Counted from the first letter of the stretch, positions 3,320-51,185 are shown. The stretch: DNA of 64,000 bases from Schmidtea polychroa (GCA_044892525.1 CM097887.1:87894397-87958396); one strand, 5' to 3'. The notes: generated by a model from the sequence alone, not told the origin. Numbers and translations are program-made.

Positions 3320-3770
3320 GTGATATGTGATTGGAATGCGCAGAAATATCATGAAGATATAGCCCTAGGTGGAGTAGAAATCAAAAAAAAGTAAAACACC
3401 AAATATATAAAATAAAAGAGGAAAAATAACATCAAATGACGACACACAAAAATAAAGTAAAATAATAACAAAAGCAAGAAGTATCACACGAAACAAACAT
3501 AGATATAACACAAATAAATAACAGGAGGTAAACAAATTCGAATTTATGGCCATAAAGGAAAATGAAAACTAGAGATAGAAAGATTTCATCAAGAAATAGA
3601 ATATTCTATGAATATGGCAACATCCAATATGGCGCCGAAACCAACAACTGCTAAATACAAAAGTTGTTGTAGAAAATGATAATGATGGTGATATTCCTCT
3701 GTTCTGGGGTGCAAACATATGTCTACTAAATTTATTTGTATTTTTTATATACTCATTTCCTGACAATATA
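3320..3770 (-). repeat. Strand-skewed A-rich LTR-like domain (dispersed family)
   Basis: Aligns by eye with 19340-19620, 46100-46310 and 12290-12700, and in reverse complement with 50380-50600 (e.g. aaaagcaagaagtatYacacgaaacaaac). Confidence 0.6.
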
Positions 3771-12089: not shown

Positions 12090-13659
12090 TTAAAATACAA
12101 AATTATGAATTAATGATTATTAAAGGGAAAGGAAAAACAGCGAAACTGTCGCCTACGAATTTAAGGGGCTTCGAAATCGTTCTAAGAAAAATGATTATAT
12201 TTCGAAAATTCTTTTACATTTTGCCATAGGGCATTGGAATTGTTTGGCTAGAACTGATTTCTAGACCCAAAACTCTAATTTGTGACTGGAATGCGTAGGT
12301 ACATAACATGCAAAAAGCAAAAAGTATAGTTAAATATTAAAAACTACACCAAGTAAACAATATTAATTAAAAGAGAAAACAACAAAAAATATAAACACAG
12401 AAATTAAATAAAATTATATAAATGCAAGAAGTTATGCAAAATCGAACTCAAAAAAACCAAATAAACATAGAGTTACAAAAAAAACAGACTCGAATAACTT
12501 AAAAGACGGTAAAAACAGTAAAAATTCCAGAAAATCCCAGAACATTCCATAAAAATGGCGATAACCATCATAAAAGCCATATAGAGCAATAAAAGTTAGA
12601 AAAATAAATAAATTAGTAATAAAAATAAAACATCTTATAAAGAAATGCAGAAAACATCAGTTGAAATAAAAAATTAAATCAAAATTAACATGGAATGTTC
12701 TGGAACCGTTCCAAATCCATCATGGACGTAAAATTAACAAGAAATAATTAAAAAATAAAAATTTAAGAATAAAAACAAAAATTATGGTACTAAAATCGCC
12801 ATTAAAAATACCAAAATTACAAAATAGAAAATTCTGGAATAAAAAGAATTCGAGTTTGTTTTAATGCATCAACACATACACGTGTACTTGCACACACAAA
12901 ACTAGGTATATATACCGACACGTTTCAGTCACAATTAATCACTTTTATGCCAAATTTTTGTCAAGTAGTTTCAGAAATCGATAGTGAGTATTGATTTTTT
13001 ATTTTATTTATGTATTACGACTAATTGACTAATTATATTGATGATGTTTAAAAATTATTTTATTTTTTTAAATTTCGTGTGATGTATAAATGATCAGCGG
13101 CGTACTGGAGTACCTGCGCCTCTGGTCAGTCTTGCATTCAACTAATTTAAAAACCTTTTATGATAACATGCAGACAGGCATTATCTATATCATATGTTTC
13201 TTTTTGTTCGGGTCTTTCGGAGGTCGAACCGCTTCATGGTCCTGCCATGGAGTTAAGTCGATGAAACCCTTCGTCTGACTCTTCCTATTTATTAGAGGTC
13301 AGCCGTAAATAGTTGACTTACTACACAACATTAAGGTTTGTCTTAGTGGTCCCAGTGGGGCTGCGAAAACAAAAACTCTTCCCGACTTAATACGCAATAC
13401 ACAGTTAAAATCACCATTAAAAATCATTGACAATAGCTCTACACTAAGGTCATAACTTGAGTAGAACTCAGACCCAAACTTATACAATTCTACAATTCAG
13501 TAATGTGGTCGGTTGAATAGTAATAAAAATTTCAGTTATGCTTATACATTTGTCGAATTTGGATTTTTATAATAATGAAAAATAGAACTTTATTTGTAAT
13601 TAAAGTGATTGAAATGATAAAGATATTCGACATACGTATAGGTAGGACTTAATCTTTAA

Positions 13660-14543: not shown

Positions 14544-14799
14544 NNNNNNNNNNNNNNNNNNNNNNNNNNNNNNNNNNNNNNNNNNNNNNNNNNNNNNNNN
14601 NNNNNNNNNNNNNNNNNNNNNNNNNNNNNNNNNNNNNNNNNNNNNNNNNNNNNNNNNNNNNNNNNNNNNNNNNNNNNNNNNNNNNNNNNNNNNNNNNNNN
14701 NNNNNNNNNNNNNNNNNNNNNNNNNNNNNNNNNNNNNNNNNNNNNNNNNNNNNNNNNNNNNNNNNNNNNNNNNNNNNNNNNNNNNNNNNNNNNNNNNNN
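14544..14799. other. Assembly gap (256 N)
   Basis: Run of N. Confidence 1.
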
Positions 14800-15804: not shown

Positions 15805-16170
15805 ATGTCTCAATCCGATGATTTTAGCGAAGGGGAAGCCGATCGGCAAATGGTTACCCGGCTCCGTACCCGGTATATTTGGTACCGCATCCACGATTGG
15901 AATCGTGGATTGGACCTCGATAACTTCGGCCCAGTTATCCGAAGTGGCCCGGAACCTGATGCCCCGGCGTGGGTAAAAACGGAGCCAGCCAACAACTTAT
16001 TACAGGAGGCCCGCGATCTAGCGGCCAGTGACGTAGAGGCCGCTCAAGTTCGGCTCAAGAAACTTGAAATACAGATCAGGGCCAAAAGAGAGGGAGTGTC
16101 CCTGGAGGAGCTGGAGGAGGCCGAGGCACCCCCACGAAAGAGAGGGAGGCCCCGCAAGTGCCAAATGTGA
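15805..16170 (+). CDS. Repeat-family ORF-a (copy A): 121-aa protein with coiled coil and C-terminal AT-hook
   Basis: ATG 2 nt after the acceptor ttttacattgcAG (15801-15802). Motif RLRTRYIWYRIHDW is shared with 48541-48600. C-terminal RKRGRPRK. Confidence 0.6.
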   Translation: MSQSDDFSEGEADRQMVTRLRTRYIWYRIHDWNRGLDLDNFGPVIRSGPEPDAPAWVKTEPANNLLQEARDLAASDVEAAQVRLKKLEIQIRAKREGVSLEELEEAEAPPRKRGRPRKCQM

Positions 16171-16427
16171 TCTCTCGCCGACCCACGCACTCATATGACA
16201 ATCGACTTAATTTAATTAACTTTTGTTTATTGTTTATGTATTAATTTAAATAATTGAAATTGCCTAGTGTTCGTTATTAAATAAAGTATTTTTTTTATCA
16301 AGTTGTAGGTTTAGCGGTTATAATAAGGCTTAGTGATAAAGTACTACCGTTAATTAATAATTTGATTACTTGTTTGTTTCAACTCTTTTTGGTATGAATG
16401 CAATTAATAAACTCCTTTATGTTTTAG

Positions 16428-16885
16428 TGTACAAACTATTGGAAAACCTGCGTAGAGACCGAGAACAGGCGCAAAAACAAGCCGACGAACTCCGAGTCTG
16501 GGTTGATAAACTCAAAGGGAAGTGCCGGGAGTTCGAGGGCACCTGGTTTAGTCCCGCGGATCAGATCCTCCAGCTGCAGACCCAAGCCGCACAAGATCAG
16601 ATGGAGATTCGCGCACTAAAATTACAGGTGCGCGCGCTCGAAACCGAGGGCAATGAGCAATTCGTTCACGAAGCCGTGGCAAGACAAATCCGGCCGCTGA
16701 CTGTAGAACTGGCCGCGATATACCCTCCAGCCGCTGAAAATAGACCCAAGCGAAAGCGGCTAGGACGGAACATTAGGGAAAAGTTAAAGAAGGCCAGGTT
16801 GGCCGAATATGAACGTCAGGCGAATTCTTCAACATCGCATGCGTCTGCGACGGGACTAACCAGCTCTGCCAACGAGCCAATTTGA
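16428..16885 (+). CDS. Repeat-family ORF-b exon (copy A): coiled coil, EGTWFSP motif, basic tail
   Basis: Open frame after the acceptor gttttAG (16426-16427). Homologous by eye to 24614-25372 and 49214-49652. Confidence 0.6.
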
Positions 16886-17004
16886 ATTGTTTTTTTTTGT
16901 TGATGTATATTTTTGTAGTGTATTAAAATAGTATACGAGATATTTTGTTATATGATTGCCTGAGGAATGAAAATTTGCGCGTAAGGTTTTGGGAAAACAA
17001 TTTC

Positions 17005-17230
17005 GGTAAGGGACCTGAGGAAATCGGACACAAACCTTCTAACGGTAGTCCGTGGACCCATAGAGTACTCGACAATTATAGTGCCTTAGTGCGCTCAACT
17101 TTTGCGAGTACTCAACCCCTTGGTACAGTACCAACGTTGATTACTCAACGGGTATCAAGCGGAAAACAATATTGTATTTTGGGTTACGCTGGTAACAGCA
17201 CTTAAACACTCGACCACCAGTAACCCACCA
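17005..17230 (+). repeat. Conserved structured terminal motif, copy A
   Basis: About 70% similar by eye to 49765-49998. TGGGTTAC (17180-17187) pairs with GTAACCCA (17220-17227), enclosing a GCTG-GTAA-CAGC hairpin. Upstream GTTGA-TTAC-TCAAC hairpin. Confidence 0.8.
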
Positions 17231-20200
17231 GAATTTACAACTATATTCTTTATCAAATAATCAGTATTATCAAATTAGTGATATAAAATAACGGCGGTCT
17301 ATGGAGGTTTGGCTTGGCCCTGGTCATGTTCCTTCTTGCCCTAAAATATGCACATGATCCTGCCCTCCGGTTCATTACCTAATCGCATTTTTCCTACCCC
17401 TCTTATTTGTTGACAGTCATTGTTCGTTTGGAAAATGTTTAACTAATCAGTGATGGAGTTTCGTAGTGTTTAGCTTGGTGACTTGTCGATTTCAATTTTT
17501 AATAATCATGTCATGTCCTCATTAGAATAATTTTATATTTTTATTAATGGCCGAAAATGAAGAGAAACGTGTCACCTGCAATTCGCCATAATCAAGGATT
17601 CTCCAATTACTCGAACTCAAACTTTAATCTTGATCAGACTAGATTCTTAAAATGTGACCCAATAAACGGTCGCTACAGTGTATGTTTAGTTACAAATTAA
17701 ATCTGTATATTTGTATACGCATTATTTATTTGGACATTAATGGTTCCCGATTACAATCATTTGAAGACCTTGAAGAAGCTCTGCAAAAAGGGGTCTCCCT
17801 CAGTGTATTGTTGATCCTCCCATTTTCCGCATAGTCAATGATTAGATCATTACCTTTTCTGCTTGTCATATTTTACTCTCACCGCCTACTCTGATAGGCA
17901 CATTTCTCGGTTTAAGTGACTTGTACCGAGTCACCACTTTGCATCCTTCTCCTTGCTCCCCTGTTTACGCCCATGGTTGTGGATTGATGTGGTATGCAAA
18001 TTCTTTATCCTTACATTACTTGACTTTAAATAAAATTTCTTGTGGATATTTTGAAAAATGCAAACAAATTAAATTGTTTTTAATATTTGTATTCAATTAT
18101 AGACGCTATAAATACTAAAAGTATAACAACAAAGACCAACCATGAAATCTCCAATGAATGACAAATTCAAGTAATATACCGTATCAAATGTACTTTATAA
18201 TATAAATTTAGTGATAAACAATCCTTGATAATATTATTTGAGAGCAATGAAGAGAAATATTTAACTTTATTCCACTATTTAAATATATTACATTTATGTA
18301 TAAAGATTAGGAAAACAAATTGTAGGTATTTTTCTTCAGTAAAACACTTTCAAATTGATACATTTTCAAAGAGTATTTATTTCCCATGTCAATTTAACAA
18401 TGATATAAAAAATCCAAATCCTTTATAAGCTATTTCTTGAGAATCTCGTATTCATCCATGAAATTGATTAAGTATTTTTTATCTTCGTTTTCAGGAACAA
18501 AACTTGTGTTAATTATTGTTATATCGTCTACACTGTATTTTCTGTCCCATTACCAAATCCATAAAGTTAATTCCTGCAATTTCCTGCATTTCCTGTTTCT
18601 AAGGGATGTTGTTCAGCATTTTCATTCATTCTTTCAATCTATAACTGTTGGGCAAGAACCCATTAATTCCGAAATTATTTGAAAGAACCGATAACATAAC
18701 GTGTATCTCAATAAGTTTTTCAAAATCTAATCAAAAAATTTCAAGTAATATGGCACTTAGTTAATTAATAATATATAAAACACAAGTAAATAAAATCATA
18801 AACGCGACAAAAGCAACATTTTCTAAAAACATTAGAAAATTGAATAAAATTAAATAAAACTATCAAAAAAAAACAAGTTTGCTGAAATAGTTTGAAAAAG
18901 AATTATTAAAGAAATTATTTAGTAAAATGGAAAAGATCAAAAGAAAATGATAAACAACCGATCGAAAATTAAAATTTAAAAGAATGAAATTAGTAATTAG
19001 AAATCAGGACACGCGTAAGTGAATTCAACTTGATTGGCTAATGAGACACTGACACTGTATTACTGTATACCGAGTTGTAGCATACCAAATAAAAATGTGC
19101 TGGGTCAGAAAGCCGATAGTTAATAAATTAATTAAGTAAGTAATAGAAATTAAGAAAAAACTGTTAGAGCAATCCACATAGCAGGAAAATCGCAAGAAGT
19201 CGATAAAAAATCATATTAAAAATACCAAATAAAAACAAAATAAATGTTGAGAAAAATCTGAATTTAAGCAGACGTAATAGTAACGTAAAGGGAATGTGTT
19301 GGATAATAGCATACAGACTCAGCATTAAGTAGAGTTAAAACATCAAGTAAACAAAATTAAAAAGAACTCACGTCACATCAAAAAGATAAACACAAAAGTA
19401 AAGAAAAATTAAAACAAAAGCAAGAAGTATTACACGAAACAAACTGAAACATAGCATAGACACAACAGAAGTAAACAAATTTGAAAAAATGGCGATAAAG
19501 GAAAATCGGAATGGAAATGGAAAAGATTTCCACAAAATATCATCAGAAAATAAATTAAGAGTCAAAATTATAACAGAAATGTTAAGAAATATGAAAATGG
19601 CGAAATCCATAATGACGGCCAAATAACTTGTTGAAGTTAAGTAAAATATAAAAGCTAGGAATTAATTACCAAAAACCAAAAAAAGAATAAAATAAGAATT
19701 AAAAGAAATAGGAATTAGTTAATAAAACTATTAAATTAGCACAGGATATTCTAAAAAGGGTCATATCATAATGGCGGCAAAATTATTTATAAATAAAATA
19801 TAGAAACTAGAAAAAAAATTAATCGTAAATTAAATTTTTAAGAGTAAAAATAATAATTTTTGTTTGTATTATGTTATAAGTTAATTAAACGATAGTGTCA
19901 GAGATTTTAATTTTTCTGTGTGTTTTTAAAACGAAACCATTTTTGATGACTAAAATCGTTAATCCTTTTTCGATCCTTAGCCACCACACCAAGCTGCAAC
20001 TCAGCAAAATCAAGACACATTCTAACTTACGAGGAGAGAAGCAGTTCTACTGCACCCCTTATCAGACAATTTCTTGTGCCTAATGTGGATATTTACATTC
20101 TTTCCGAGAAAGCAGTACCTTTTTTTTGTTGGGTTAGCGGAATACTCCTTCCAGGACAGCCAATTCATCACCAGCTCAATTTCTCTTCGGAACATCTACT

Positions 20201-22149
20201 TCTTCACCGAATTAACTAATTGACTTTGATAACTGTCCAACTTTTGAAGATATCTCAATCGCAAAAGATCATTTTTGTCGCTGGACAGTGATCCCCGTTT
20301 CTCTTCGGCATCCACATACAAAACGTACATCCCAAGAACATTTGAGAATGCATCAAACCTTTACGTCCGGAACATTTCAAATTCAAGCCTGCCTAGATAT
20401 TCATGAAGCTATATATAAGCTAATCGAAATCAAAGATAACAATGCTAAAGTTATCATTAATGACTCAATGCCTCTTTAACCTATGCCATTTGGAACCAGA
20501 CTTTTTGCTTGACGACACATCCTTCTTTGATGATTGTCGTACTCCGGAAAACAAATTTCCTGAAACCGAGAACTCATACATTGAAGAACCATTACTTCCC
20601 ATCGAAGATAACTGTATAGCTTATTCCTCTTTTGATACAACTACTGAGACCCCAAATACAACTGCTGAGAATGCGGAACCACCCACAGTAAAGATCATCC
20701 AAAAGGACGGCATTTAATACTCGGCAAATTATAAAAAGGAAAATGATTATTAATTTCATGATCATGAGTCAATCATCATGGAGACGGTTGCCAATGTAGA
20801 CTTGGCTTAACTCGAAGTATAATTGATTTGCACACCACAGGAGTGTAGTAAATTTAAGTTCAATCTGTGTACATCGGTAGAAAATGATTGATAAGCACAC
20901 CAGTACACAAGGTGCTAAGAAACAAGACTAACGTATGGGGGAGTTCGGTACAAAGTAACAAACACAAACATCTGGCTTAGCTAAGTTATAAGTCCACGCG
21001 TGCTTCAGAGATATTAAAAAAAGTGTGACTAATAATATGTATACGTATGAGTGTAATGGACATGAAAAGAATGATGGACAGCCCTTACAACAGACATGTA
21101 TGGTATTTGGACTAAAAGTATATACTTTATGAATTTAATAAATTATTGAAATATTTATACTTATATTTTCGTTTACCGCTGAGGAACAATAAGTGAATGG
21201 AAATATTGATGGGCTTGACACAGAGTAGATAGATGATGATACGTAACATGGGAATGAATGGGTTATGAGATAGGCAGTAAGCTAGTGCATCAATTTTATC
21301 GGCGTACAAAAGCTGGCTCAAAATTTCCTTTCTAACCGGTATACTTCATCTGATTTTGTGTTTTCCGTAACATGCTTCATTCACTAACCTAGTCTATGTA
21401 AGGGCTTATGGATATTGTTCTACTTATGTTTTGGATAAAATATAAATCAGGATCAATAGGTGACGAGGGAATGTCAGTCCTGAGCGCATGTAGGCCTATG
21501 AAGGGTTGTTAAAAACGTCTTAAGAGAGTGGGAGTGGTGATGAATGTGTCTTATGAAGATATGATTATAACATGGGTATCTGAAATTCACACAGTAAAGG
21601 AAATCAAAAAACCGAGGGGAGCAAAATCTGGATCGACCACCACAATTGGAAAACAACCAGGATTAGAAGCTGAAATCAAAGCTACAGTATGAAGTTGTAA
21701 AACAGACCAATGGATCAGTGGCAGTCAATCAGACAAACGGAGGATCGGACCTGCATCATGGTGGTGTTAAAACGATAACACATCTTAAATAAAGCGTTTA
21801 TGGTTTGCAGTCAAGCCCTCCAGGAGATTCGCATTACCATTGACAAATTATAGCGAAATGACGAAGATATCCGACAAGGCGTCATCCCCAGTACCGATGG
21901 GTAGTGCTAACAGTTTGATGATGATGAATTAATGGAGGACATGATCCACTATTGACACCAGGAGCTTAAATTTCCCGAATTGGTGTCGAGGAAACGCACT
22001 GAGTCCAGCGAAGACGTAACAGACTGTGACAGCAGATCGGGCCGCTTGCCCCAGGGTGTTTGGGCAGTGAATGTGGAACATCTGATATTAATAAATTACT
22101 TATTCAATACTTCTATTGCGAAATAGTAGAAGTGTTGGGCTGAGTCGAA

Positions 22150-22750
22150 AGCATAATCGTCAAATTTAGGACAGATAAGACGCGAACAAATAAAATAAGA
22201 CCACAAATTGCTAAAATAAATAAATCAAGAGACAAAAGAAACAATAACGTAAAATATTAAGATTAAAACAAAAAATAAAAAATAGAAAAATTAAAATAAG
22301 GTAATAAGATAAGGAATAAAATGACGAAAAATGCAACAAATAATGAGGAATTTAAGAAACAAATAAAAAATATATTAAAATAAAGAAAAATAAGGAAAAA
22401 CAACCAAAGAAATAAGAAAAACAAATTAATTTAAAAGTTAAAGCGGTACTCAATTTTGATTGGTCCGCATAAACAAAAAATTCCTATATAAGCAAACAGC
22501 AAATTCAATATAGTTACTGTTTAACAACCACCATTACAGGTAAGCTCATAATTTAAAAACTACTGTTTAACAACCACCATTACAGATCAACACTCAACCA
22601 TTACAGACGATCACCGACGTACAACCTAAACGACTATCAGGGACAATTAGATTTTCAACTCAGTACAATAACCGAATTCAGCTTTTCGACTCAGCTTTTC
22701 GAGATCACAGATCGATAAAGAATAAAGTAAGGATGTATTCTTATTATGAA
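22150..22750 (+). mobile_element. LTR-like promoter segment
   Basis: A-rich run, TATATAAG near 22486, duplicated 25-mer tactgtttaacaaccaccattacag (22515 and 22561), donor CAG|GTAAGC at 22540, AATAAA near 22722. Confidence 0.45.
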
Positions 22751-24613
22751 TTCGAGTAAATGTTTCTCATGGAAGTTAATAGTAATAATGTTTATTATCA
22801 CAATTTTAATAAAATTTTAATGTTCTCTCCATTTGGTCTCATATTTTAATAATCAAGTATTTTCAATAATGAAATTTAAAACCTTTTATGATAGATAACT
22901 ATGCATGATGATTTCGATTTTTATGGAATTTATATGAAAATTATGGTTGAGTAACGTGGAGTTGAGGAGACCTGTACCATGGTGTGAGGAGCCTTCGGGA
23001 GCTCAGCCGGTGGGTACAGACTTCTTCAATCACGCAGCTGACGTGGGCCGGAAAGTGGGGGCTTCCTCACGGGTCCATCGCTGAGGGAATTAAAATGTTG
23101 CAAGAATTAGCTGACAATAACATAGAATACCATTCGGATTGGAAGATGAGGACGATCTTAAAAACCATGACTGAGGTGGCTACAAACGTTTATTTTTCAA
23201 AACCCATCATTCTTAGCTGTTACATCTTGAATTCTTTACCTAATACCCGTAATCAGTCTGAATCGCCTAAGTGTGCCAATCGACATTCCATCTTCTGAGT
23301 ACCAAACCCATTTCTGTTGAAATGCACGTCAATTTCCGTCTGACCTGTAGAAACTGAGTACCAACCCATTCGTCGACGCTATACAATCACATGAGAAGTA
23401 TAGATGAAATTTATGGAGCACAATAAGAAAATGTATTACGAAACTGTTTTATTTTTAATCAAATTATTTCGAAGTGTTCTGAAAATTACACTCACAGTAG
23501 GATAAACTCCCTTCAGTAAAGGACACCTCCGATTGACCTTGTCAAATTGCAGATTTTTCGAATAAGTCGAAGGAAATGTCCACGAAATAAAGTTATCCAA
23601 GTAGAAAACACAATTAACTGCACATCGCGGGGAACAAATCCAACATTAGCGTTTGATGAGAGAGCAACCTAGATGACATATTGATTCCACGAATTGATTC
23701 GACCCAGTGGTGTATTGCGATCATCTGCGAACGATAATTCCGATAATGACCAAACATACGAGATAAATCACACGCACTAACACACTAGTACTTACTCACA
23801 TATGCGACCTGCAGTATTTTCCCAGTCAGCTACAAGTATTGAGAACCGAAATTAAAACACGCACAGACAACAGGGCTGGCTCGGATAGATAGCAGGCCGC
23901 CTGTCTCATGCTTCCATTATCTGGCATGACGAACTATTTTTCATGAGATTAATCTTATTACAGGCGTTTCCCGACATATAGCTAATTTCATCGTAGATTA
24001 AAATTTTGACTTGCAGAATGGTAATTCCGAACATTAATAATAGATAACGGCCAGGTGATTGGTGCATATTCCAAACAATTTGGTATTAAACGGGGACCCA
24101 GCAGCTATTGAGTGGAGATTAATTTTACCTGCGCATCCGCTTGCCGAGGTGGGAATTCTGAGTTATGTCCTGGGGGAATAATGCGTTGGTTAAGGGGGAA
24201 ATCGGAAGGCGTTAACAGTAAAATTTTGTTTTCTGCGTTTGGTCTATTTCCAAAGATATTATTAGAAGGAATTATTAGTTATCGGCTCAATTTCGTTGTC
24301 CATTTTGTGTACAAGGAGGTTGGGCATCCCCGCATCTAATTAATTACGAATTTGTTTTTGTTGTTTTTCCATTACACCAAGGGAAAGGGGGTCACGGCTT
24401 ACAACTCGACCGGTAGATGACATTCGAATTTAATAATAATAACTCAGAGATTTTCTTCACCCGTTAGCATAAATCCCTTCCTCTTAATATATTAGGACCA
24501 CATCAAAATTAATGTATAGCTTGTAGGAAAATTCATAGATGATTAGGCCACCAGGCTGGTTTAATAGACATAGCGAATCTTGTATTTTACCCTTATTGTT
24601 TCTTTCATTATAG

Positions 24614-25372
24614 CCATTGAGAATGTTACCAAGCTCGAAGTCGTCTCTCAAACCCTGCTTCTCATGCTCAGATAAGAATTCTATAATCAGAGATTTGCAA
24701 GCCCAGATCGGTCGATACAAGAAAGCGATCGACCATCTGGAAGGTACATGGTTCAGCCCAGTACAAATGAAGGAGGTACAAAAGAAATTGTACCGAAGCG
24801 AGCACTGTCGCGACGCCTTAATAAGCGAGAGTAGGGCCCAACGCAGTCTTATCAAAGAGCAGTCCGAGGCTCTACACGAGGTCTACGTACAAGCGGCAGC
24901 AACTAGAAAGATAGTGAGTATACCTATCAATGGAGCGGACGACCTTTTCCCCGTCCATCATGAACTTCCTTCCAATTCGTCATCTTCGGCTAAGAAGCCC
25001 TGCCGGGAATGCGTGGAAGCCGATCTCTCTCCCCGGTCAACCATAGTGTCTCCCATTGGAGCCCAGAAAGGGATATCATCGACCGCGTCTTCCTCTGTCG
25101 TACTATCAAACACCCTGATTGTTCCAAAACCCAAGCGTCGACAGTTGTCCAGAGCTGAGCGTAAAAAGCGTCAGCGCGAACGAGCAATCGCCAAACAAAG
25201 TGGACTATCTGCCGAGCTCTCCAGTACTTCGAACGATCCCCCTGTAACGATCGATTTAACCGTAGGGATCCCAGGGCGAATCATCTCCGCCGCTGGTGTA
25301 ACTTGGGAGGAGAATGCCTCCGAATTCTTCGAGCTGGAGGAGCTGTTAGCCGACGCAGAATGGGAAAAGTAA
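24614..25372 (+). CDS. Repeat-family ORF-b (copy B), about 250 aa, intact
   Basis: Acceptor ttcattatAG at 24612-24613. LEGTWFSP motif, coiled coil and Arg-rich KRRQLSRAERKKRQRER. AATAAA near 25510. Confidence 0.6.
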   Translation, partial: PLRMLPSSKSSLKPCFSCSDKNSIIRDLQAQIGRYKKAIDHLEGTWFSPVQMKEVQKKLYRSEHCRDALISESRAQRSLIKEQSEALHEVYVQAAATRKIVSIPINGADDLFPVHHELPSNSSSSAKKPCRECVEADLSPRSTIVSPIGAQKGISSTASSSVVLSNTLIVPKPKRRQLSRAERKKRQRERAIAKQSGLSAELSSTSNDPPVTIDLTVGIPGRIISAAGVTWEENASEFFELEELLADAEWEK

Positions 25373-26269
25373 AGATCTCAATCCAATGCAACTACATCGA
25401 TCATGTTTAGTAAATTGAACGATTCTGACTTATATGTTCTCGTAAACCGTCTTCCCTTGATTTATATTAGTCCTGTAGTTTTAACTGTATAGCGTACTAT
25501 GATAGTAGAATAAAGAAATTTTCGTCATTTCTTATTGTTAGTTTTTGTTTGATTAGCCATTATAAAGGTTCAGAGTAGTTTTTACAACCCAAGCGCAAAC
25601 TTTAGTTCGAAAAGCATTAGACAATCTGTATATAACTCGGTGTCAGGTAGGGAAGGAAATGGTGGAGTGATCAGACGTAAGCCCTTCCATCGGCAGTCAG
25701 AAAAAGGAAGTCGATGCCTCAGTAAGGAGTAGTCCTAAGGTAGGGGCTCACCTGCTTACTGGTGTCTCGCCGGCATAGCACATTTCCAACGTGGAGCAAT
25801 TCACGGGTGCTATGTTGGAGTACAAGTTGTGCGGGGTCTTGCTCCGGATTGACGTAAGCACACTTAGCGTAAATGAATGGACACTCATCTCCTAGACAGG
25901 TGCGTAAATGAGTTAAGGTCAATCAAGCACTACCCCAGCAGAAGAAACAACTGATTTAGATTTCCATTAATAACTGAGGTTTGATGACAAACAGGTATAG
26001 TGTAAAACTGAGCTTAGGTATGATGACACTTATGATAGACTTACGTATAATTTTAGAAGAACAGCATTTGCACGCACTACGCCTGGAGCTACAACAATTA
26101 CGAACGGTAAGGCTGCTTCAATGTGGATGCGGGGAAAGAAACGCCCAGGATACGGCATGTCAATAGAACTTTTTGCAGAATGTTGTGATTTAAAATTAAA
26201 TCTTAGTACAATTGTTTTTATGATTTCCTAATCATTATAAAGAAAACAATTAATAAACATGGGGCCTAA

Positions 26270-26420
26270 AGCTAAGTCGAACGTATGCCTACTAACGGGT
26301 GTCTAGAAATACACACAAGTGTTTGTCGACTATAGTGTACAAAGGTACACTCACTTTTCGCAAGTACTCACTGAAAACAGCAAGAAAGGGTAAAATGTGG
26401 ATTTCCTCTAACCCACTGTT
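26270..26420 (+). repeat. Structured terminal motif, copy B (partly deleted)
   Basis: ctgaaaacagcaagaaagggtaaaatgtgg...taacccac is nearly identical to the reverse complement of 46425-46470. Confidence 0.65.
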
Positions 26421-27072
26421 AACAAAAATCTGTAATTAAAAAATATAAAAGATATCTAATAAAAAATAAAAAATAAAAAAACGCAAGTTACAGATTGAAA
26501 CACTTTAATGCAAAGAAAAATATAAGAATAACAAAAATGAAATCATTGTAAAGAAACTTGTTAAAATCATGGCAATCAGCCAATAATAATGTAGGAATCC
26601 TGCTATAACTTGATTGGCACAGCGAATAGCAAGAATTACACTACTTATTAGAGCTGCACTGACAGCAGAGAAACATCAACTCAACACAACAAAACAACGA
26701 ACACTAAATTATTGCTAATTTTATTTATTCATCTGTTAATAATTAATTGTTTATGCACATTTGAATTCAAATAAGAGATTGTTAGATTGTTTTTAGTTCT
26801 ATTTGTAGTTAACTTAGTAATTTTAGCGTAATTATTATTGTTACATTTGTTTCGTGAATCGGTATATAAAATAAAATTGTAATTATCACGTTTTTCTTTT
26901 ATTATTTATTATGTATAATTGTAACTTGAAAGGAATATTTTTGAAACAGCTCAAACCTATTTGGAAATCAGTTGGATCGAAAGAAAAACCGGAGAAAGCC
27001 TAAAGCGGAAGTGTATCTTAACACAATTAAAAGATATTGCCCATCGGTAGACTGGCCGAGTAGTGTTCAGTG

Positions 27073-30725: not shown

Positions 30726-31343
30726 GGGTTAAGTTGAAAATAGGCACGAAGTGCTTTCTACTTGTAACCCACCCTTTCCATTTACATTGACGAATGTTAA
30801 TGACTTGTTATATTCGATGAATCTGTTTGTATATTGACGACGCGGTGAAAATGGTTACTGTTTGAATGGATTGTGATAAGTTATGTTTCCGGTTATGACA
30901 ATGAGTAAATAAGTGTGTGTAGTATATCGAGGATAGAGGTTTGTGGAACCACAATGACTTCATTTAGTTAGTGACAGGACATTCGAAATGGTTGAGAATT
31001 ATCACATGCAAGTGTTTTTGATGAGTCCAAATTAATAGAAATACGGAAAGAAATGAACTAAGTCAGAGACGAACTAAGTCACAGACCTTGTTTAGTCTTT
31101 CGCGAGTCCATGATCTGAGTAATCAGATTTTGAGATTATCAAACTCACGTGATAATCTTATTACCGAAAATCGTACATGGCGATTGTTGATAAATGAACA
31201 AAGACGAGTGCTGATTAAGGCCTAAACCAATCCATAGCTGTAACGACAAGTATACAAATAGCGAAAGCCTAGCGTGTATGAGTCCTTCGGTATCATGGTT
31301 TAGCAACAAGAACCCCTAATGGTAGATCGAATATAAAATTACA
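30726..31343. mobile_element. Compact terminal motif (copy E) plus putative LTR of about 580 bp
   Basis: GGGTTA-agttgaaaatagg-CACGAA..tctact-TGTAACCCACC parallels copies C and D. TGTAAC (30763) to ATTACA (31343) gives TG..CA ends. Confidence 0.45.
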
Positions 31344-42756: not shown

Positions 42757-43829
42757 AGACTGTTTATTTCGAAAAGTAAATACACGTGAACGATTCAAAC
42801 AACCATATAAATTTTATTTAATTATTTTTTTAAATTTTGGAATTAATTAATTTTCAATTATAATTTTTTATGAAATATTTGTTATATAGTTTTCCTTAAT
42901 TTTTCTAAACCTAAATTAAGATAATTTTGTTATGGAATCATCAAGCTACTGAAAAATAAATTTCCATTGTATTTTAATTTCTTTTAATTCATAAGTCATT
43001 GATTAATAAAAAGATTAATAAGCCTAATTAGAAAAGACATGCAATTAAGAAGAAAACAAAGGTACTGAACAAAATAGGGTACTGTATTTGTTCTAGGGTC
43101 TTATTGATCTCTTGAGGATCTTATCAATCGAATGCCTATGGTGAGATGAAAAGAAAAGATATCAGTTACTCAAGGCACCAATATGACTATTGAATCTAAC
43201 ACCTGTGTATCCATGGTGACAGCCCATGTTGGTGCTGTACACAGTGGCTGGATGTGAGAGGGAAGCCGAGCTCCACTGCAGAAATTACTACTCACTTGCT
43301 GCTTTCGATTATTAAATTGTTCCGCCTTCTGACCAATCTTATAATTTTCTTTTCTACCTCTTTGACTCCAGAACGAACCACATCGCCTCCAGCCTATTGA
43401 TCTGGGTATTAAACTTGCCCTTTTGGGCCTTCAATTGAGACCATTTTTATATTGGCGATACATGATTATTATCTAAATAATGACCATATGCAACACTCTC
43501 ATTGAGGCCTATCCAAGTTTTTTTGTGGTCATTTTTACTCAACCCTTGTCAGGCCAATTGTTTACAATTTGTAGTAAAAATATTTTAAAATTCAATTGCT
43601 CTACTGAACTTTGATAAAAATCAATTTCCTTCTACCTACATTTTCGTATTGGATTGACTAATGAGAAAATGTGTTTGTCGTTTGACTATTATATTCACAT
43701 AGGAAAGTTGAATGTTTACATACTCAACTGCTCAAGTGACTACAATTCGTAGTTTATATACCTATGTGCTATTATTAATTTTTTTAAATTTATTATGAAG
43801 ACATATGACAAGGTAAATACATAAAACTA

Positions 43830-46019: not shown

Positions 46020-46560
46020 TTTAGGCCCAAGCATAAGCAACGCGAGAAAATGCGTCTGAACATAAAACGCAAACATACCAGTAAGTCGAGTTAAATTAGA
46101 ATCATGTTAAAACACCAAATAAACATAACTAATAGAATTCACATAACACCAAAATAATAAACTCAAAAGTAAAACTAATATGAAACAAAAACAAGAATTT
46201 TATAGGAAGTCCACTCAAACCTAACATAGATATATAACAGAGGTAAGCAGATTTTAATTAATGACGATAAAAAGAAATAAGAACGGAAATCAGAAAGATT
46301 TTCACAAAATAACATCGAAAAGCGAATTAGAGATAAAAATTACAATGATCCCAAGTGATTCAACTTTATTAATAAAAAGCAACATACAATAATTAAAATA
46401 ACAAAAAGTAAAAAGAAATAACTGGTGGATTACAGATAGACCACATTTTACCCTTTCGTGCTGTTTCCAGCGTAACCCAGAATAAAAAAGTGGTGTACCG
46501 CCCGATACCCGTTGAGTGACCAACGTTGGAACTGTACCCCCACTGAACTCGCTTTGGCCG
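46020..46560 (-). repeat. Structured terminal motif copy D plus T-rich LTR-like domain
   Basis: Minus strand TGGGTTAC-GCTG GAAA CAGC-..-GTAATCCA (46479-46426), followed by a T-rich domain homologous to 50380-50600. Confidence 0.75.
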
Positions 46561-48420
46561 AAATTCGATAATACATGCTCTCTCGCAAATGAGCCAATCA
46601 CTATCGACCACAACCAACGAAACGATGATTTTCATACAGAACCCTACAGCACCCGTATGAATCTAACCTACTCGTAGACCAAAATTTCCCCTCAGACCTA
46701 CCTGATCAACCCAACAATGGTCCTAGGGTAACATCACTATCATTGTTCAGGTAGTTACATTCCCCATTCAACATATACGCTGTTAAAAGCAGTTATCATA
46801 CTTATAACTTCCAATAATTCTTTATGAATCTATTTTACATGCAAGTAGAAAATAAAAATATTTAATTCGCATTTTAAAAAAAGGGAAAAATGATACCTGA
46901 AAATCATGTTTAAATACTCTTTGTAGTGTAAGCGTTAATAATAAGAATCAACATTTTTTTGGATGTTTGTCGTTATTATTTATATTATTATTTTTTATGT
47001 GATTGTTGTTATTTTATTTGTTATTATTTTATTGTTGTTATTTTATTATTTTTACAAGGTAACAAATATTATAATAACCAAAAAATTATTATAAATTACA
47101 ATTTAAAAAAAAGATCGATAAAAATTCAAAAATCAAATTCAGAAAAAAAACTAAGCAACTTAAAAAATCCAAAGAGAAGAAATTGTAATAACCAAAGAAG
47201 AAATAAATAGAAACTCGAAAATATAAGGAATATATATGTCCTCTAACAATCCGGGGCAATTAAAGGAAAACATTTGGCTATTCTTTACCTGGAGTAAAAC
47301 TGAATTGACCGAAATTATAATATTTTGTGTATATGCCAATAGCGCTTTTGATCATTCATTATATTATTCATTACATCTAACAATTCGTCATTCAACTAAG
47401 ATTCCAGAAATTAGATTGAGAATTACCAAATTCGGGAACATATCTGGTCCTGCATTATATCTAACAATTCGGTGTGACCAAAGGGTTTTTTTTCGTTTAT
47501 ATTAACTGAATAAAGTTGTTAATAATTTAATTCTATCGTTATTAATTTATTCAAGTGCAAATATTTATTTTTATTGTACCAAATTCATTTTTCGCATTCT
47601 ACACACAGGTACCCCAGCAGTCCCAAAACAGATTCTAAAGGAGACTCTGGTGGGCTCTCACAATCTCTTAATATACATCTTAATATGCATCGTACTGCGT
47701 CGACTAGTTACCAGCATCATTAAACTTGATTAGTTAGCCCGAAACAAAACGTTAATAACCTCCGTTGACCCAAAATGAATACCTACGGAATTTTTGTATA
47801 CATGAGATTTATTTCTACTACAATTGCAGGTAGAAGAAAGGAAAGAGGCTCGAACAAAGCTCCGAGCATTACGATTCAGCAACATACAATTGGTTTCGGT
47901 GGAAAACCACTTAGCATAGTCGGGGGATTTTAACCTAAAGTTGAAATGAAAATCATTAAATTAACACCATTTAATTACATAACATGATTTAAAATTTTAA
48001 TAAATAATAACTTAACCCAGTAACTTAGGGAATTTAATTTTTATTTATTTTGTAAGAAGAACAACAGGATGGTTTAGCCGGTTTAAATTTTATATATATA
48101 TATATATTTTCTTTCTTAAATTTTGTGGTTGAAAAGGGAATTCAAATCGTGTTCATGATATGTTTTTAAAGAAATATATGTTTAAATTTGAATTTGTGTT
48201 TCAGTGTGATTAAAGTCGAATAATATTTCAGTTCACAATCCTTAATTGCGGGTCAACCTAAACGTTGATGTTGTTACTATTACACGATCAGTAGAAGGGG
48301 AAATAGGGCACACAACGGGTATAAAATAGGGAATCCCAGGGGTTTCAGGTGAGAAATGAGTCTGGGAGAGTTAAGTCAATTCTCTAGGATTTAATTAACT
48401 AAATTTTGTTATTTGAATAG

Positions 48421-48900
48421 AAATGTACTCGACAAACTACTTCTCGGGCTAACGCGTCGACAGCCGAGTCCAATCTAGAAGTGTCCCCAGTGAGGCACGA
48501 GGGACAAACTACTTCTGAAGACGACTAATCTCACAATCAAGCTCTTATCAGACTTCGAACGAGATGGAAATGGTACTGTATCCATGACTGGAGACACCAG
48601 AACGTCGTCCCGGCAGAGCCGAAGGTAGAGCTCTTCATCAACTATACAAAGCAAGCGTTGATGGGGGCCGTCGACGACGTCAAAGCGGCCCTGAATCGGC
48701 TACAAAAACTGGAAACCGAAACCATCGCCGGTGAATTGGAAGATCCCGATGGATACGCTAAGTCTCAATGTTATTCCGAAAGGACTGCCGCCATATGGTG
48801 TAGCGTGGAAAACCCAGACGTTTGCAACGTGAGAGCAGGGAGCCGCGACGAATACTCCCCTCAACCAATCAGCCGCATTGTGATCAGCTGTACATTTTAG
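48421..48900 (+). pseudogene. Repeat-family ORF-a (copy C), disabled
   Basis: Acceptor ends at 48420. ALIRLRTRWKWYCIHDW..ALMGAVDDVKAALNRLQKLE is homologous to copy A. One in-frame TAA near 48526; the first ATG is out of frame. Confidence 0.65.
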
Positions 48901-49213
48901 ACGGTTCTGATGCCGTTGCCATCTCAGTTGACTGATCTGTTTTGACAATTTACTTTATTCCATTTGTCTACAATTTACTTTGTTTAATTTGTTAATAATT
49001 TATTTTGTTTAATTTATTTATAATTTATTTTGTTCAATCTGTTTATGTTTCTAAATTTTGATATGCCTGCATTTGACTTAATTTGGGGATTAACGGCGCT
49101 CTGATACAAGGCCGGAGGGTGGAATCTACGTACAATACAACCTAAATTATATGGGTGCGATTAATTGACTAAATTAACAAGAGAGTGTAACATTAAATAA
49201 TTCATCTTTTCAG

Positions 49214-49652
49214 TGCTGAAATTCTTGGAAAATATGCGCCAAGATTGCGAACGGGCGCAGCAGCAAGTAGAGGAGTATCAAGCCAAATTATCAAAATTCA
49301 AAGGGCGCTGCCGCGAGTTGGAGAGTATGTGGTTTCCGCCTATCGAAATGCAAAAGCGCCTAAAGCTGATCCAACAATTACAGCTTCAGAGCACTCAGGA
49401 CCAAATAGAGTTGCGACTCTCCGCCTGAGAATCAGGGAGTTGGAGGCACAGGTGAATCAACAGGAGATCCACAAAGATGCGATAGCCCCAATCCGGCCTC
49501 TGTCAGAGCTTATTGACAGGACCAGCACTTCTGCGCCTCCCCAGAAAAAGATTCGTCTCGGTAAGGCAGAACGGGCCAGGCAACGACAGGCTAAATTAAC
49601 CCACCTGCCAATTACTCCAACTGCCCCAATGGAGTCGAATAATGTACACTAA
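49214..49652 (+). pseudogene. Repeat-family ORF-b (copy C), single frameshift
   Basis: Acceptor ttttcAG at 49212-49213. KFKGRCRELESMWFPP matches KLKGKCREFEGTWFSP of copy A. Frameshift near 49420. Basic tail KKIRLGKAERARQRQAK. Confidence 0.7.
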
Positions 49653-49764
49653 ACATATACTGTCTTATGTATGATTAAAATTAAATTTGTGTTTATGGTT
49701 ATGTTAAATCGTTTATTTGCATGAACTCTGATAAAGATTGATCATTCGGCAACACAATCTGGAA

Positions 49765-49998
49765 GTAAAGGGACCGGAAAAAATCGGACATAGGTCTTCT
49801 ACCGGCAGTCCGTGGACCCAAGTTGAATACTGGAAAATTATAGTATGCCAAGCATACTCACTTTTTGCTGATACTCAAACCCTTGGTAAAGTACCAACGT
49901 TGATTACTCAACAAGTACCAAGCGGTCGAATTGTATTTGTATTCTGGGTTACGCTGGAAACAGCACCACGAGATAAGATGTTGATTACCTGTAACCCA
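49765..49998 (+). repeat. Conserved structured terminal motif, copy C
   Basis: TGGGTTAC (49945-49952) pairs with GTAACCCA (49991-49998), enclosing GCTG-GAAA-CAGC. Shares cagtccgtggaccca and gtaccaacgttgattactcaac with copy A. Confidence 0.8.
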
Positions 49999-51185
49999 AT
50001 AATAATAATAAAATGATAAAAAACAAATAATAAACAAATATATTAGTACATAATAAAATTGGCCTTACTTTCGAATAAATTCAATAAAATAGTTATTATT
50101 CTTTTTAAAAGTATAATTAGATAAATTCTTAGAATAACAAGAATAAGTTACTAAGAATTTTTTGTGACCGAAATGCATTGGTATATATATCCTAATTATG
50201 GTGTGTGAGTATATATGCGTGCGTTGATTCAGTAAAACAAATTTGAATTATTTTAATTCTAGCTAATTTTGAATCCTAATTTTTTATCGATTTAATTATC
50301 GATTTTTTATAAATTATTATTAATTTCATTTTCTAAATGTTATATTTGATTTATTTTTAATTAGATTTGCCGCCATGATGGATATGGGTTTTTTCAGAAC
50401 ATTCCACGATGTTTTTTTGGTATTTTTAATAAATCTTTTTTGATTTTAGTTCCTATTTCTTTTTACCGCAGTTAATTCAATTTTTTACTATTGTTATGTA
50501 TTCATGTTGTGTTTGAGTAGGTTTCATGCAATACATCTTGATTTTGTTTGATTTTTCTTTTAATTTGGGTTTATTACTTTTGTGTGATGTAAATTCTGTT
50601 AATTACATAAAACTTTGACAATTTATGTGAAAACATATTGAAAATGATGAAACATCAAGGACTTTGATTAAACCTGCATAAAAAACTCTGTGAAAATACC
50701 TTGAAAATCGTGAAAAATCATAAAATTTCAGTTGACCTACATAAAATTTTTATTGACCTAAATAAAAATACTAGGAATTTTACGAAATAAAATCCTCTTG
50801 GAGGTTGATCAAACGATGGACAAACTATCAACTCCCCAAATAAGTATTAATTTTTATTTAATTTAATAAATTTTTGTACTTTTATTATTTTGGTGTTTTT
50901 ATTGATTTTTTTACCTGTGCTTCTATTTTATTTTTGTGCCTTTATATAGTCCCCTATCATATGCTCCCTTTTAATTAAAATTCATCTTCGAATTTATTTA
51001 TTTGATTACAAAAATATGTTTAAGATAAGCATTGGAAGCTTTGTGATACCCAGTGCAAATCCAATAGTAGTCTAGTTTCGAGTCTCCTGCATAGTACTGA
51101 TAAAAGCCAAAATTTGTTCTTTGGATATTGGTTTTCATTTTATTGAGGATACCATCTTCTTACCATTACCTCTAAACCAATCTAG

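What the first reader, a model, noticed from the sequence alone, without database searches (positions are those of the whole stretch)
15805..16885. Unrecognised repeat-borne two-gene module (ORF-a plus ORF-b) in three diverged copies
Seen: ORF-a (RLRTRxxWYxIHDW plus coiled coil) at 15805 and 48421. ORF-b (coiled coil, E[GS][TM]WF[SP]P, basic tail) at 16428, 24614 and 49214. Protein motifs persist while the DNA is strongly diverged, implying past purifying selection. I recognise no domain match. All copies are followed by the same structured terminus and are embedded in LTR-like sequence. Inference: accessory genes of a large LTR retroelement family (giant Burro retroelements with extra ORFs are reported in Schmidtea) or of an undescribed element class.
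Basis: partly seen in the sequence, partly recalled or inferred. Interest (0 to 1): 0.8.

Follow-up and report, generated by a model that had tools for sequence, protein, structure and literature searches.

The report
Orphan two-gene repeat with conserved tail
A GC-rich repeat scattered through this AT-rich, probably planarian, genome carries two small genes for helical, basic-tailed proteins plus a conserved structured 3' end; it has no enzyme gene and no LTRs, so it looks like an unclassified, probably non-autonomous mobile element, not part of a giant Burro retroelement.

Summary
ORF-a (two copies) and ORF-b (three clear copies, plus two decayed relics I found at about 31.0 kb and 43.3 kb) are real homologues. 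Non-synonymous differences are few (pN 0.19-0.39) while synonymous sites are saturated, and GC3 is 0.53-0.60 in a 28% GC genome.

Copies 1 and 3 are colinear: ORF-a, an AT-rich spacer, ORF-b, a short spacer, then a ~230-nt terminus. The terminus (78% nucleotide identity) is better conserved than the genes (57-66%). A 5'-truncated terminus-only copy lies on the other strand.

I found no LTR or TIR pair flanking copy 1 or 2; around copy 3 only an inverted pair whose arms run on into an unrelated repeat. There is no RT, integrase, recombinase or transposase nearby, no ribozyme or Rfam family, and no Pfam, PDB or fold match. Among 1.84 billion protein representatives only three clusters are relatives: one intact ORF-b on short environmental contigs and two chimeric gene models.

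A new feature: in all three copies a 9-10-nt perfect complement of one terminus hairpin site lies upstream of ORF-b, and its variable positions covary.

Best reading (about 0.4): a compact, enzyme-less retroposon-like element whose proteins coat its RNA and whose 3' end is used in trans. Burro membership is unsupported.

The parts
15805..16170 (+). Copy 1, ORF-a1, intact, 121 aa. Acidic N-terminus, W-rich helix (residues 9-29), disordered linker, long helix 60-96, and a basic tail resembling an AT-hook.
   Evidence: the AT-hook match is sub-threshold in Pfam
16171..16393 (+). Copy 1 a-b spacer: 27% GC and not conserved between copies. It holds the 10-nt site U (16343-16352), which is complementary to the terminus.
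16394..16885 (+). Copy 1, ORF-b1, intact, 163 aa from its ATG (frame open from 16361). Helix 2-50, a kink at W-F-S-P, helix 54-109, and a basic helix 125-147.
17000..17238 (+). Copy 1 conserved 3' terminus. It contains local hairpins; site T lies at 17040-17049.
24458..24467 (+). Copy 2 site U, a 10-nt complement of terminus site T, about 150 nt upstream of ORF-b2.
24617..25372 (+). Copy 2, ORF-b2, intact, 251 aa. It belongs to a diverged subtype and has a long C-terminal extension. No ORF-a was found upstream.
26262..26426 (+). Copy 2 terminus with an internal deletion (site T at 26292-26301), followed by an A-rich stretch.
48421..48900 (+). Copy 3, ORF-a3, broken: at least one in-frame stop and no in-frame start. 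It contains site U of this copy.
48945..49044 (+). Copy 3 a-b spacer: a 25-nt AT-rich tandem repeat, 4 units.
49201..49652 (+). Copy 3, ORF-b3, broken: at least one frameshift, and the start is not conserved. Its closest relative is the environmental ORF P0001 (68% identity over the first part).
49763..50009 (+). Copy 3 terminus (site T at 49803-11), followed by an A-rich stretch.
46415..46615 (-). Terminus-only copy (the 3' two-thirds), i.e. a 5'-truncated copy with no ORFs.
31025..31222 (+). Decayed ORF-b relic of the b2 subtype.
   Evidence: E 2e-4 against P0003; E 4e-7
43295..43446 (-). Decayed ORF-b relic of the b2 subtype; weak and broken.
   Evidence: E 0.01-0.1 per piece

Best explanation
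The module is the whole, or nearly the whole, body of a compact dispersed mobile element of about 1.5-1.8 kb that encodes no enzyme.

Shown:
- Two separately initiated small ORFs.
- A conserved structured 3' end.
- Copies on both strands in different states of decay.
- One 5'-truncated copy.
- Composition foreign to the host.
- Purifying selection on both proteins and, more strongly, on the 3' end.

Inferred:
- ORF-a and ORF-b are Gag/ORF1p-like structural proteins. They would oligomerise through long helices and bind nucleic acid through basic tails: an AT-hook-like tail in ORF-a and a basic helix in ORF-b. They would coat the element's own transcript.
- The ~230-nt terminus would be the cis signal read by a reverse transcriptase encoded elsewhere, by a partner LINE-like or Penelope-like family. 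Copying would then start at the 3' end and yield truncated copies and A-rich tails.
- A 9-10-nt pairing between a site upstream of ORF-b and a terminus hairpin would fold the ORF-b cistron into a closed loop, perhaps to control translation of ORF-b or template choice.
For: - Copies 1 and 3 are colinear. Identity by segment is 66% (ORF-a core), 57% (ORF-b) and 78% (terminus), with no similarity in the spacers or outside the unit.
- At least five ORF-b loci and four termini lie in 64 kb, on both strands.
- There is a terminus-only copy.
- A-rich stretches follow 2 of the 4 termini: 65% and 55% A, against a 36% background.
- pN is far below pS, and GC3 is 0.53-0.60 in a 28% GC genome.
- The predicted folds are all-helical with basic C-terminal thirds.
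- No enzyme domain was found among the neighbouring ORF pieces.
- The U-T complement is present in all three copies at the same terminus site, with both variable positions compensated. Per-copy shuffle frequencies are 0.010, 0.017 and 0.031.
- Relatives elsewhere appear as an intact stand-alone ORF-b (P0001/P0005) and as chimeric gene models joined to half an SLC6 transporter and to a CH domain, as expected for intronic insertions.
Against: - No partner RT-encoding element is in the window, so use in trans is pure inference.
- No target-site duplications were found.
- Two of the four termini lack an A-rich tail.
- Only two copies define the 5' boundary, and an assembly gap lies 1 kb upstream of copy 1.
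- Copy 2 lacks ORF-a and sits in 6 kb of GC-rich, undecodable sequence that could be a larger element.
- The proteins show no RRM, zinc knuckle or any fold match to known ORF1p or Gag.
- The terminus folds only modestly better than shuffles (z -2.3 and -1.7).
- The module cannot be told apart from a multi-copy host transcript that is merely retro-copied.
Confidence: 0.4

Rival explanations
1. The module is the 3' portion of a much larger autonomous element: Burro or another LTR element, a Penelope-like element, DIRS, or a Polinton. The rest of that element would be absent or unrecognisable in these copies. On this reading ORF-a and ORF-b are accessory genes.
For: - Copy 2 lies at the end of a 6.4-kb GC-rich block (20000-26426) with no decodable genes.
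- Giant planarian and rotifer retroelements are reported to carry accessory ORFs, some with coiled coils (PMC6431247).
- Penelope-like elements often have an inverted 5'-truncated copy upstream (PMC8557442), and copy 3 has an inverted terminus fragment 1.8 kb upstream.
- Polintons are reported as major piRNA targets in planarians (PMC8532177).
Against: - There is no LTR pair.
- No RT, IN, YR, GIY-YIG or polymerase domain was found in any ORF piece tested.
- There is no hammerhead or other ribozyme.
- Copies 1 and 3 lose similarity just upstream of ORF-a. Random 5' truncation of a long element would not end at the same place twice.
Confidence: 0.25
2. It is a non-autonomous DNA transposon whose terminus is a terminal inverted repeat and which is moved by a transposase encoded elsewhere.
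For: The terminus occurs in inverted orientation on both sides of copy 3: 46415-46615 (-) and 49763-50009 (+).
Against: - The inverted pair extends beyond the terminus into an unrelated dispersed repeat, X (46108-46345 against 50418-50605). The terminus is therefore not the outer end.
- No inverted partner exists for copies 1 and 2.
- No target duplication was found.
- A-rich tails follow two copies.
Confidence: 0.1
3. The copies are endogenised copies of a small virus-like or satellite-like replicon, inserted several times from diverged lineages.
For: - The composition is foreign to the host (ORFs 50-55% GC, GC3 up to 0.60).
- Each gene looks like a separate small unit with AT-rich junctions.
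- The lineages are deeply diverged but the ORFs are intact.
- There is a cyclisation-like long-range complement.
- An intact ORF-b occurs on low-coverage environmental contigs.
Against: - There is no polymerase, Rep or capsid-like fold.
- Nothing was found in BFVD or in the viral contig scans.
- There are no ribozymes and no rod-like fold.
- The density of five loci in 64 kb fits intragenomic amplification better than repeated endogenisation.
Confidence: 0.1
4. It is a lineage-specific host gene family (helical chromatin- or RNA-binding proteins) with a conserved 3' UTR element, expanded by local duplication and leaving many pseudogenes.
For: - Four of the five ORF-b loci are on the same strand within 35 kb.
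- Copy 1 is fully intact.
- Conserved blocks alternate with spacers of host-like composition.
Against: - GC3 is far from that of neighbouring host genes. The QPRT exon has GC about 0.32, and the 558-aa ORF is AT-rich.
- Relics and a terminus-only fragment lie on the other strand.
- Relatives sit inside unrelated gene models.
- Only three relatives turned up among 1.84 billion representatives, although the library holds some gene models of a close relative: the QPRT exon's best match, at 92% identity, is a UniParc-only entry like P0003 and P0004.
Confidence: 0.1

Closest known systems
HAL1-type ORF1-only derivatives of LINE-1, and LINE ORF1p in general (from my own knowledge; not retrieved by any search here)
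   Same: - A protein-coding but enzyme-less element.
- A coiled-coil protein with a basic nucleic-acid-binding C-terminus.
- A shared 3' end, 5' truncation and A-rich tails.
   Different: - It has two unrelated small ORFs instead of one.
- It has no RRM, CTD or zinc knuckle, and no sequence or fold match.
- No partner LINE has been identified.
Accessory ORFs of giant retroelements: Burro in planarians and Terminons/Athena in rotifers (PMC6431247)
   Same: - Small ORFs of unknown function, some with coiled coils, carried by repeats in the same animal group.
   Different: - Here there are no LTRs, no gag-pol, no RT and no hammerhead motif.
- The unit appears to be only about 1.5-1.8 kb.
Penelope-like elements (PMC8557442)
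   Same: - 5'-truncated copies.
- Occasionally an inverted truncated copy upstream, as for copy 3.
- Some clades carry a coiled-coil ORF1.
   Different: - It has no RT/GIY-YIG ORF, no pseudo-LTR tandem and no hammerhead ribozyme.
- The inverted fragment is 1.8 kb away, and its similarity runs on into another repeat.
5'-3' cyclisation sequences of retroelement and RNA-virus genomes, e.g. Ty1 CYC5/CYC3 and flavivirus CS (from my own knowledge)
   Same: - Short (7-11 nt) complementary sites far apart on one RNA, kept by covariation.
   Different: - Here the upstream partner is internal, between the two ORFs, not at the 5' end.
- The pairing is inferred from three copies only, and its function is unknown.

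Membership tests
LTR retrotransposon (Ty3/gypsy, Burro) | Pair of long direct terminal repeats flanking the element | tested here: not met
   Self-BLAST, repeat finding and sensitive flank-against-flank BLAST were run for all three copies. The only result was a 28-nt AT-rich match in copy 3.
LTR retrotransposon (Ty3/gypsy, Burro) | gag-pol with protease, RT, RNase H and integrase | tested here: not met
   Besides the module's own ORFs, 50 ORF or stop-to-stop pieces were scanned with Pfam: all ORFs of 100 aa or more, plus pieces of 60 aa or more around the copies. The only hits were QPRT, Tc1/mariner DDE_3 and zf-BED.
LTR retrotransposon (Ty3/gypsy, Burro) | Sequence similarity to described Burro elements | not testable with these tools
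   No Burro or Repbase sequence can be reached. Only the description in PMC6431247 was available.
Non-LTR retroposon / LINE-dependent non-autonomous element | Conserved common 3' end | tested here: met
   Four termini were found by nhmmer (E 1e-67 to 8e-29). Identity between copies 1 and 3 is 78%, higher than in the ORFs.
Non-LTR retroposon / LINE-dependent non-autonomous element | 5'-truncated copies | tested here: inconclusive
   There is one terminus-only copy at 46415-46615 (-). A single case in 64 kb is not enough.
Non-LTR retroposon / LINE-dependent non-autonomous element | Poly(A) or simple-repeat tail and a variable target-site duplication | tested here: inconclusive
   A-rich stretches follow copies 2 and 3 but not copy 1 or the solo terminus. 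No target duplication was found.
Non-LTR retroposon / LINE-dependent non-autonomous element | An RT-encoding partner that shares the 3' end | not testable with these tools
   There is no RT in the window, and the source genome cannot be searched. The viral and metagenome scans were empty.
Penelope-like elements | RT plus GIY-YIG ORF, and a hammerhead ribozyme in the pseudo-LTR | tested here: not met
   Pfam scans were negative. Rfam found nothing at gathering threshold or at E up to 5.
DIRS/Ngaro tyrosine-recombinase retroelements | RT plus tyrosine recombinase; inverted or split terminal repeats with an internal complementary region | tested here: not met
   No such domains were found. The only internal complement is 9-10 nt.
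TIR DNA transposon / Polinton | Terminal inverted repeats at both ends with a fixed target duplication; a transposase, or polymerase and integrase | tested here: not met
   An inverted terminus exists only near copy 3, and it extends into repeat X. There is none for copies 1 and 2. The only transposase nearby is an unrelated Tc1/mariner fragment.
Deltavirus-like / viroid-like circular RNA replicons | Self-cleaving ribozymes and a rod-like, self-complementary genome | tested here: not met
   There is no ribozyme family, and the minimum-energy fold of the whole unit is branched, not rod-like.

The most novel reading that the evidence does not exclude
The module is the founding example of an undescribed kind of protein-coding but enzyme-less mobile element (or endogenised satellite-like replicon) in flatworms. 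It would have two orphan helical nucleic-acid-binding proteins, a 3' recognition structure more conserved than its genes, and a covarying long-range pairing that closes the second cistron into a loop. It would have persisted as several deep lineages.
Probability: 0.15. Interest if true: 0.75.

Novelty: new variant of a known kind. Interest (0 to 1): 0.45.

Why it matters
More than half of planarian genomes is repeat, and I recall from the genome papers (not read here) that much of it is unclassified. A compact family that keeps two orphan proteins and a structured 3' end under selection, at a density of about one locus per 12 kb in this window, would help in several ways:
- It would explain part of that dark matter.
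- It would give a handle on which reverse transcriptase, or other machinery, serves non-autonomous elements in flatworms.
- It would remove spurious exons from gene models. Two database proteins are chimeras with host genes.
- The covarying long-range pairing is a concrete hypothesis about RNA structure that sequence and probing data can test.

If the module proves to be just the tail of a known large element, its value drops to that of an annotation.

Tried and rejected
Searches that found nothing:
- Word-based search of 5.8 billion protein clusters with ORF-b1 and with the ORF-a alignment: no hits.
- Exact look-up of eight window ORFs: none is in the collection.
- Degenerate-pattern scans of metagenome contigs (P0001) and viral contigs (ORF-a1), and an exact scan of both collections for the 21-nt terminus core: nothing.
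- PDB by sequence and Foldseek against PDB and BFVD: nothing better than E about 1.
- Paper searches for the family or for the two ENA sample codes: nothing specific.

Ideas rejected:
- The Pfam sub-threshold hits (DUF5551 at E 0.02, and AT_hook) are treated as noise, apart from the visible R-G-R-P tail.
- ORF-a and ORF-b are not related to each other (hhalign).
- ORF-a and ORF-b as two exons of one gene: the apparent acceptor before ORF-b is simply coding (I/V-L-V), and it is also in frame in the environmental ORF P0001. No in-phase donor was seen at the four GT sites I checked by eye near the end of ORF-a1.
- A hammerhead read by eye in the terminus: not supported by Rfam.
- LTR-like repeat upstream of copy 3: only 28 nt, and AT-rich.
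- P0002 (a fish-like coiled-coil protein) is a spurious hit of the profile.

A slip to report: outputs of my scripts and one notebook entry name stop-to-stop pieces of the broken copy 3 by their coordinates, which bound its breaks. One search also printed HMMER's per-piece alignments together with HMMER's own consensus line. They are not repeated here.

Full report
**1. Setting**

The window is AT-rich, about 28% GC. It carries metazoan host genes:
- Two exons of a quinolinate phosphoribosyltransferase (QPRT) gene on the minus strand, at 42013-42588 and 40374-40736.
- The QPRT exon's best database match is 92% identical, to a UniParc-only protein; the next is 69%, and other animals are at about 56%.

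This fits a planarian close to, but perhaps not identical with, an annotated species. I could not verify the species. Islands at 41-52% GC stand out from this background at about 15.8-17.2 kb, 20.0-26.4 kb and 48.4-50.0 kb.

**2. The observation**

- ORF-a1 (15805-16170) and ORF-b1 (16394-16885) are intact.
- ORF-b2 (24617-25372) is intact.
- Copy 3 has both genes but they are broken. ORF-a3 (48421-48900) has at least one in-frame stop and no in-frame start. ORF-b3 (49201-49652) has at least one frameshift and no conserved start.
- A motif scan of all six frames finds the ORF-a motif only at the two ORF-a copies, and the ORF-b motif only at the three ORF-b copies, all on the plus strand.
- tblastn: a1 against a3, 38% identity, E 2.5e-7. 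b1 against b3, 39% and 32% over two pieces, E 4e-13. b1 against b2, 27%, E 0.02.
- The b1-b2 link is real. A profile built only from b1-type sequences finds b2 at E 8e-6.
- At the DNA level only the terminus is found by BLAST.
- Open frames of 174 and 252 codons are reached by 3 of 2000 and 0 of 2000 shuffles.
- For every pair, non-synonymous differences are few (pN 0.19-0.39) while synonymous sites are saturated (pS 0.71-0.96). GC3 is 0.53-0.60, apart from 0.44 for the second piece of the broken ORF-b3.

**3. More copies**

- A profile scan of all stop-to-stop pieces found two further decayed ORF-b relics of the b2 subtype. One is at 31025-31222 (+), with E 4e-7 and independent support from tblastn with P0003 at E 2e-4. 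The other, weaker, is at 43295-43446 (-).
- nhmmer with the terminus alignment finds exactly four termini: 17000-17238 (+), 26262-26426 (+, with an internal deletion), 49763-50009 (+) and 46415-46615 (-). The last has no ORFs and lacks the 5' third, so it is a truncated copy.

This is a dispersed repeat found on both strands and in different states of decay.

**4. Anatomy of the unit**

Copies 1 and 3 are colinear. Identity by segment:

| Segment | Identity | GC |
|---|---|---|
| ORF-a core | 66% | 52-55% |
| a-b spacer | indistinguishable from chance | 27-30% |
| ORF-b | 57% | 50-54% |
| spacer before the terminus | chance level | 28% |
| terminus | 78% | 41-45% |
| 200 nt on either side of the unit | no similarity | - |

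- The unit therefore runs from just upstream of ORF-a to the end of the terminus, about 1.45 kb in copy 1 and about 1.6-1.8 kb in copy 3.
- In copy 3 the a-b spacer holds a 25-nt tandem repeat.
- The terminus is more conserved than the genes, although synonymous sites between those genes are saturated. It must therefore be constrained as nucleic acid.
- It forms local hairpins, several with compensatory changes among the four copies. Whole-segment folding is only modestly better than shuffles, z -2.3 and -1.7.
- It matches no Rfam family and no ribozyme, at gathering threshold or at E up to 5, and no tRNA.

**5. A long-range complement (new)**

In each copy a 9-10-nt perfect complement of one and the same terminus site lies upstream of ORF-b. 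That site is the loop and 3' strand of the first terminus hairpin.

| Copy | Upstream site U | Terminus site T |
|---|---|---|
| 1 | 16343-16352 | 17040-17049 |
| 2 | 24458-24467 | 26292-26301 |
| 3 | 48782-48790 | 49803-49811 |

- This is the longest exact complement between terminus and body in copies 1 and 3, and the second longest in copy 2.
- The shared six-base core differs among the copies at two positions, and both are compensated: CGGTAG/CTACCG, CGGGTG/CACCCG and CGGCAG/CTGCCG.
- A match this long to the homologous 20-nt window is reached by 48, 87 and 154 of 5000 shuffles of the body of copies 1, 2 and 3 respectively.
- Even after discarding copy 2, where I first saw the feature, the joint chance is about 3e-4.
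- In copy 1 the complement does not extend beyond the 10 nt, so it is not a decayed inverted duplication.
- I read it as a base-pairing that brackets ORF-b. Its purpose is not shown.

**6. The proteins**

- AlphaFold models ORF-a1 as a helix at residues 9-29 (which carries the W-rich motif), a disordered linker, a long helix at 60-96 and a basic tail containing R-G-R-P. Mean pLDDT is 65.
- ORF-b1 is modelled as helix 2-50, a kink at W-F-S-P, helix 54-109 and a basic helix 125-147. Mean pLDDT is 82.
- The charge is concentrated in the C-terminal third (+5 in ORF-a1, +7 in ORF-b1).
- The two families are unrelated to each other.
- There is no Pfam family above threshold, no PDB sequence match and no Foldseek match in PDB or BFVD.

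**7. Relatives elsewhere**

- A profile of ORF-b searched against 1.84 billion representatives found four proteins.
- P0001 (157 aa, E 1e-29) is an intact stand-alone ORF-b, 68% identical to the first part of ORF-b3. It lies on a 638-bp low-coverage ENA contig.
- Its sister P0005 lies on a 549-bp contig from a neighbouring sample. The two contigs are 98.9% identical.
- P0003 and P0004 are UniParc-only gene models. In P0003 a b2-type segment follows the first half of an SLC6 transporter domain. In P0004 a b1-type segment follows a CH domain. Both look like intronic insertions annotated as exons.
- P0002 is a spurious coiled-coil hit.
- ORF-a has no relative by the word-based search. I had no HMMER-level search left for it.

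**8. What it is not**

- No LTR pair flanks any copy.
- No RT, RNase H, integrase, tyrosine recombinase, GIY-YIG, polymerase or transposase was found in the 50 further ORF pieces scanned. The exceptions are an unrelated Tc1/mariner fragment at 45496-46011 and a zf-BED ORF at the window's end.
- An inverted terminus exists only for copy 3, and the inverted similarity runs on into a separate dispersed repeat, X/Y. The terminus is therefore not a terminal inverted repeat.
- The whole unit does not fold as a rod.
- Reading the module as accessory genes of Burro or another LTR element is therefore unsupported here. I could not compare with Burro sequences directly.

**9. Best explanation and rivals**

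The combination of features fits best (about 0.4) a non-autonomous retroposon-like element:
- a compact unit with no enzyme;
- structural-looking basic helical proteins;
- a 3' end conserved above the coding sequence;
- one truncated 3'-end-only copy;
- A-rich stretches after two of the four termini, at 65% and 55% A against 36% background.

On this reading the element's own proteins package its RNA, and its 3' structure is recognised by a reverse transcriptase encoded elsewhere.

Weak points:
- No partner element is known.
- No target duplications were found.
- Two termini have no tail.
- The 5' boundary rests on two copies.
- Copy 2 lacks ORF-a and lies in a larger undecodable GC-rich block.

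Rivals: the tail of a larger autonomous element (0.25), a non-autonomous DNA transposon (0.1), endogenised virus- or satellite-like replicons (0.1), and a host gene family with many pseudogenes (0.1).

**10. Verdict**

- The feature is real and well delimited.
- The Burro interpretation is not supported.
- The family is an orphan at the protein, fold and RNA level, but its likely mode of life is a variant of a known kind.
- Curated repeat libraries could not be consulted, so prior description under a repeat-library name cannot be excluded.
- Interest is moderate (0.45), and would be higher if a genome-wide census shows a stand-alone enzyme-less element with the covarying pairing.

One search printed HMMER's per-piece alignments together with HMMER's own consensus line.

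Noticed in passing
window 16343-16352/17040-17049; 24458-24467/26292-26301; 48782-48790/49803-49811: A covarying 9-10-nt complement links a site upstream of ORF-b to the first hairpin of the terminus in all three copies. The upstream site also mimics the 5' strand of that hairpin, so the two pairings would be alternatives.
   Followed up: yes
window 3392-3598, 12346-12934, 19336-19832, 46108-46345 (+) and 50162-50605 (-): A separate dispersed repeat (X/Y) of about 600 bp with no coding signal. Twice it lies next to the 3' end of a terminus in the same relative orientation. As a result 46108-46615 and 49763-50605 form an inverted pair around copy 3. This could be an inverted segmental duplication or an insertion preference; I did not resolve which.
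   Followed up: partly
window 24584-24594 / 26386-26396: In copy 2 only, an 11-nt perfect complement links a site just upstream of the ORF-b2 start to the 3' part of the terminus. No counterpart was found in copies 1 or 3.
   Followed up: partly
window 17240-18000, especially 17283-17372: A GC-richer block (36-39% GC) lies directly after copy 1 and contains a long imperfect hairpin. The hairpin gave a chance-level CopA-like Rfam hit (E 1.7). The block has no similarity to anything else in the window and its identity is unknown.
   Followed up: no
window 20000-24600: A 4.6-kb block of 30-43% GC lies upstream of ORF-b2. It has only short ORFs and no Pfam hit. It may be the decayed remainder of a larger element of the b2 subtype, or it may be unrelated nested repeats.
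   Followed up: partly
window 3993-5669 (+) and 9722-10912 (-): Two long intronless AT-rich ORFs (558 and 396 aa) have many hydrophobic segments and no Pfam family. They look like lineage-specific multi-pass membrane proteins of the host.
   Followed up: partly
window 40374-40736 and 42013-42588 (-): Exons of a host QPRT gene (nicotinate-nucleotide pyrophosphorylase). The best database match, at 92% identity, is a UniParc-only entry. The weak ORF-b relic at 43295-43446 lies just upstream of this gene.
   Followed up: partly
window 45496-46011 (-) and 63414-63998 (+): A Tc1/mariner DDE_3 transposase fragment, and a zf-BED ORF that runs off the end of the window and is possibly hAT-like. Both are unrelated to the module.
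   Followed up: no
window 14544-14799: An assembly gap of 256 N lies 1 kb upstream of copy 1. It limits what can be said about that copy's 5' flank. I left it untouched.
   Followed up: no
L001 (638 bp) and L002 (549 bp), ENA samples ERZ2271643 and ERZ2270917: Two low-coverage environmental contigs, 98.9% identical to each other, carry an intact ORF-b at 50% GC with a GC-rich upstream region. Within the ORF they differ at 3 nucleotides, 2 of which change the protein. The origin of the samples is unknown.
   Followed up: partly
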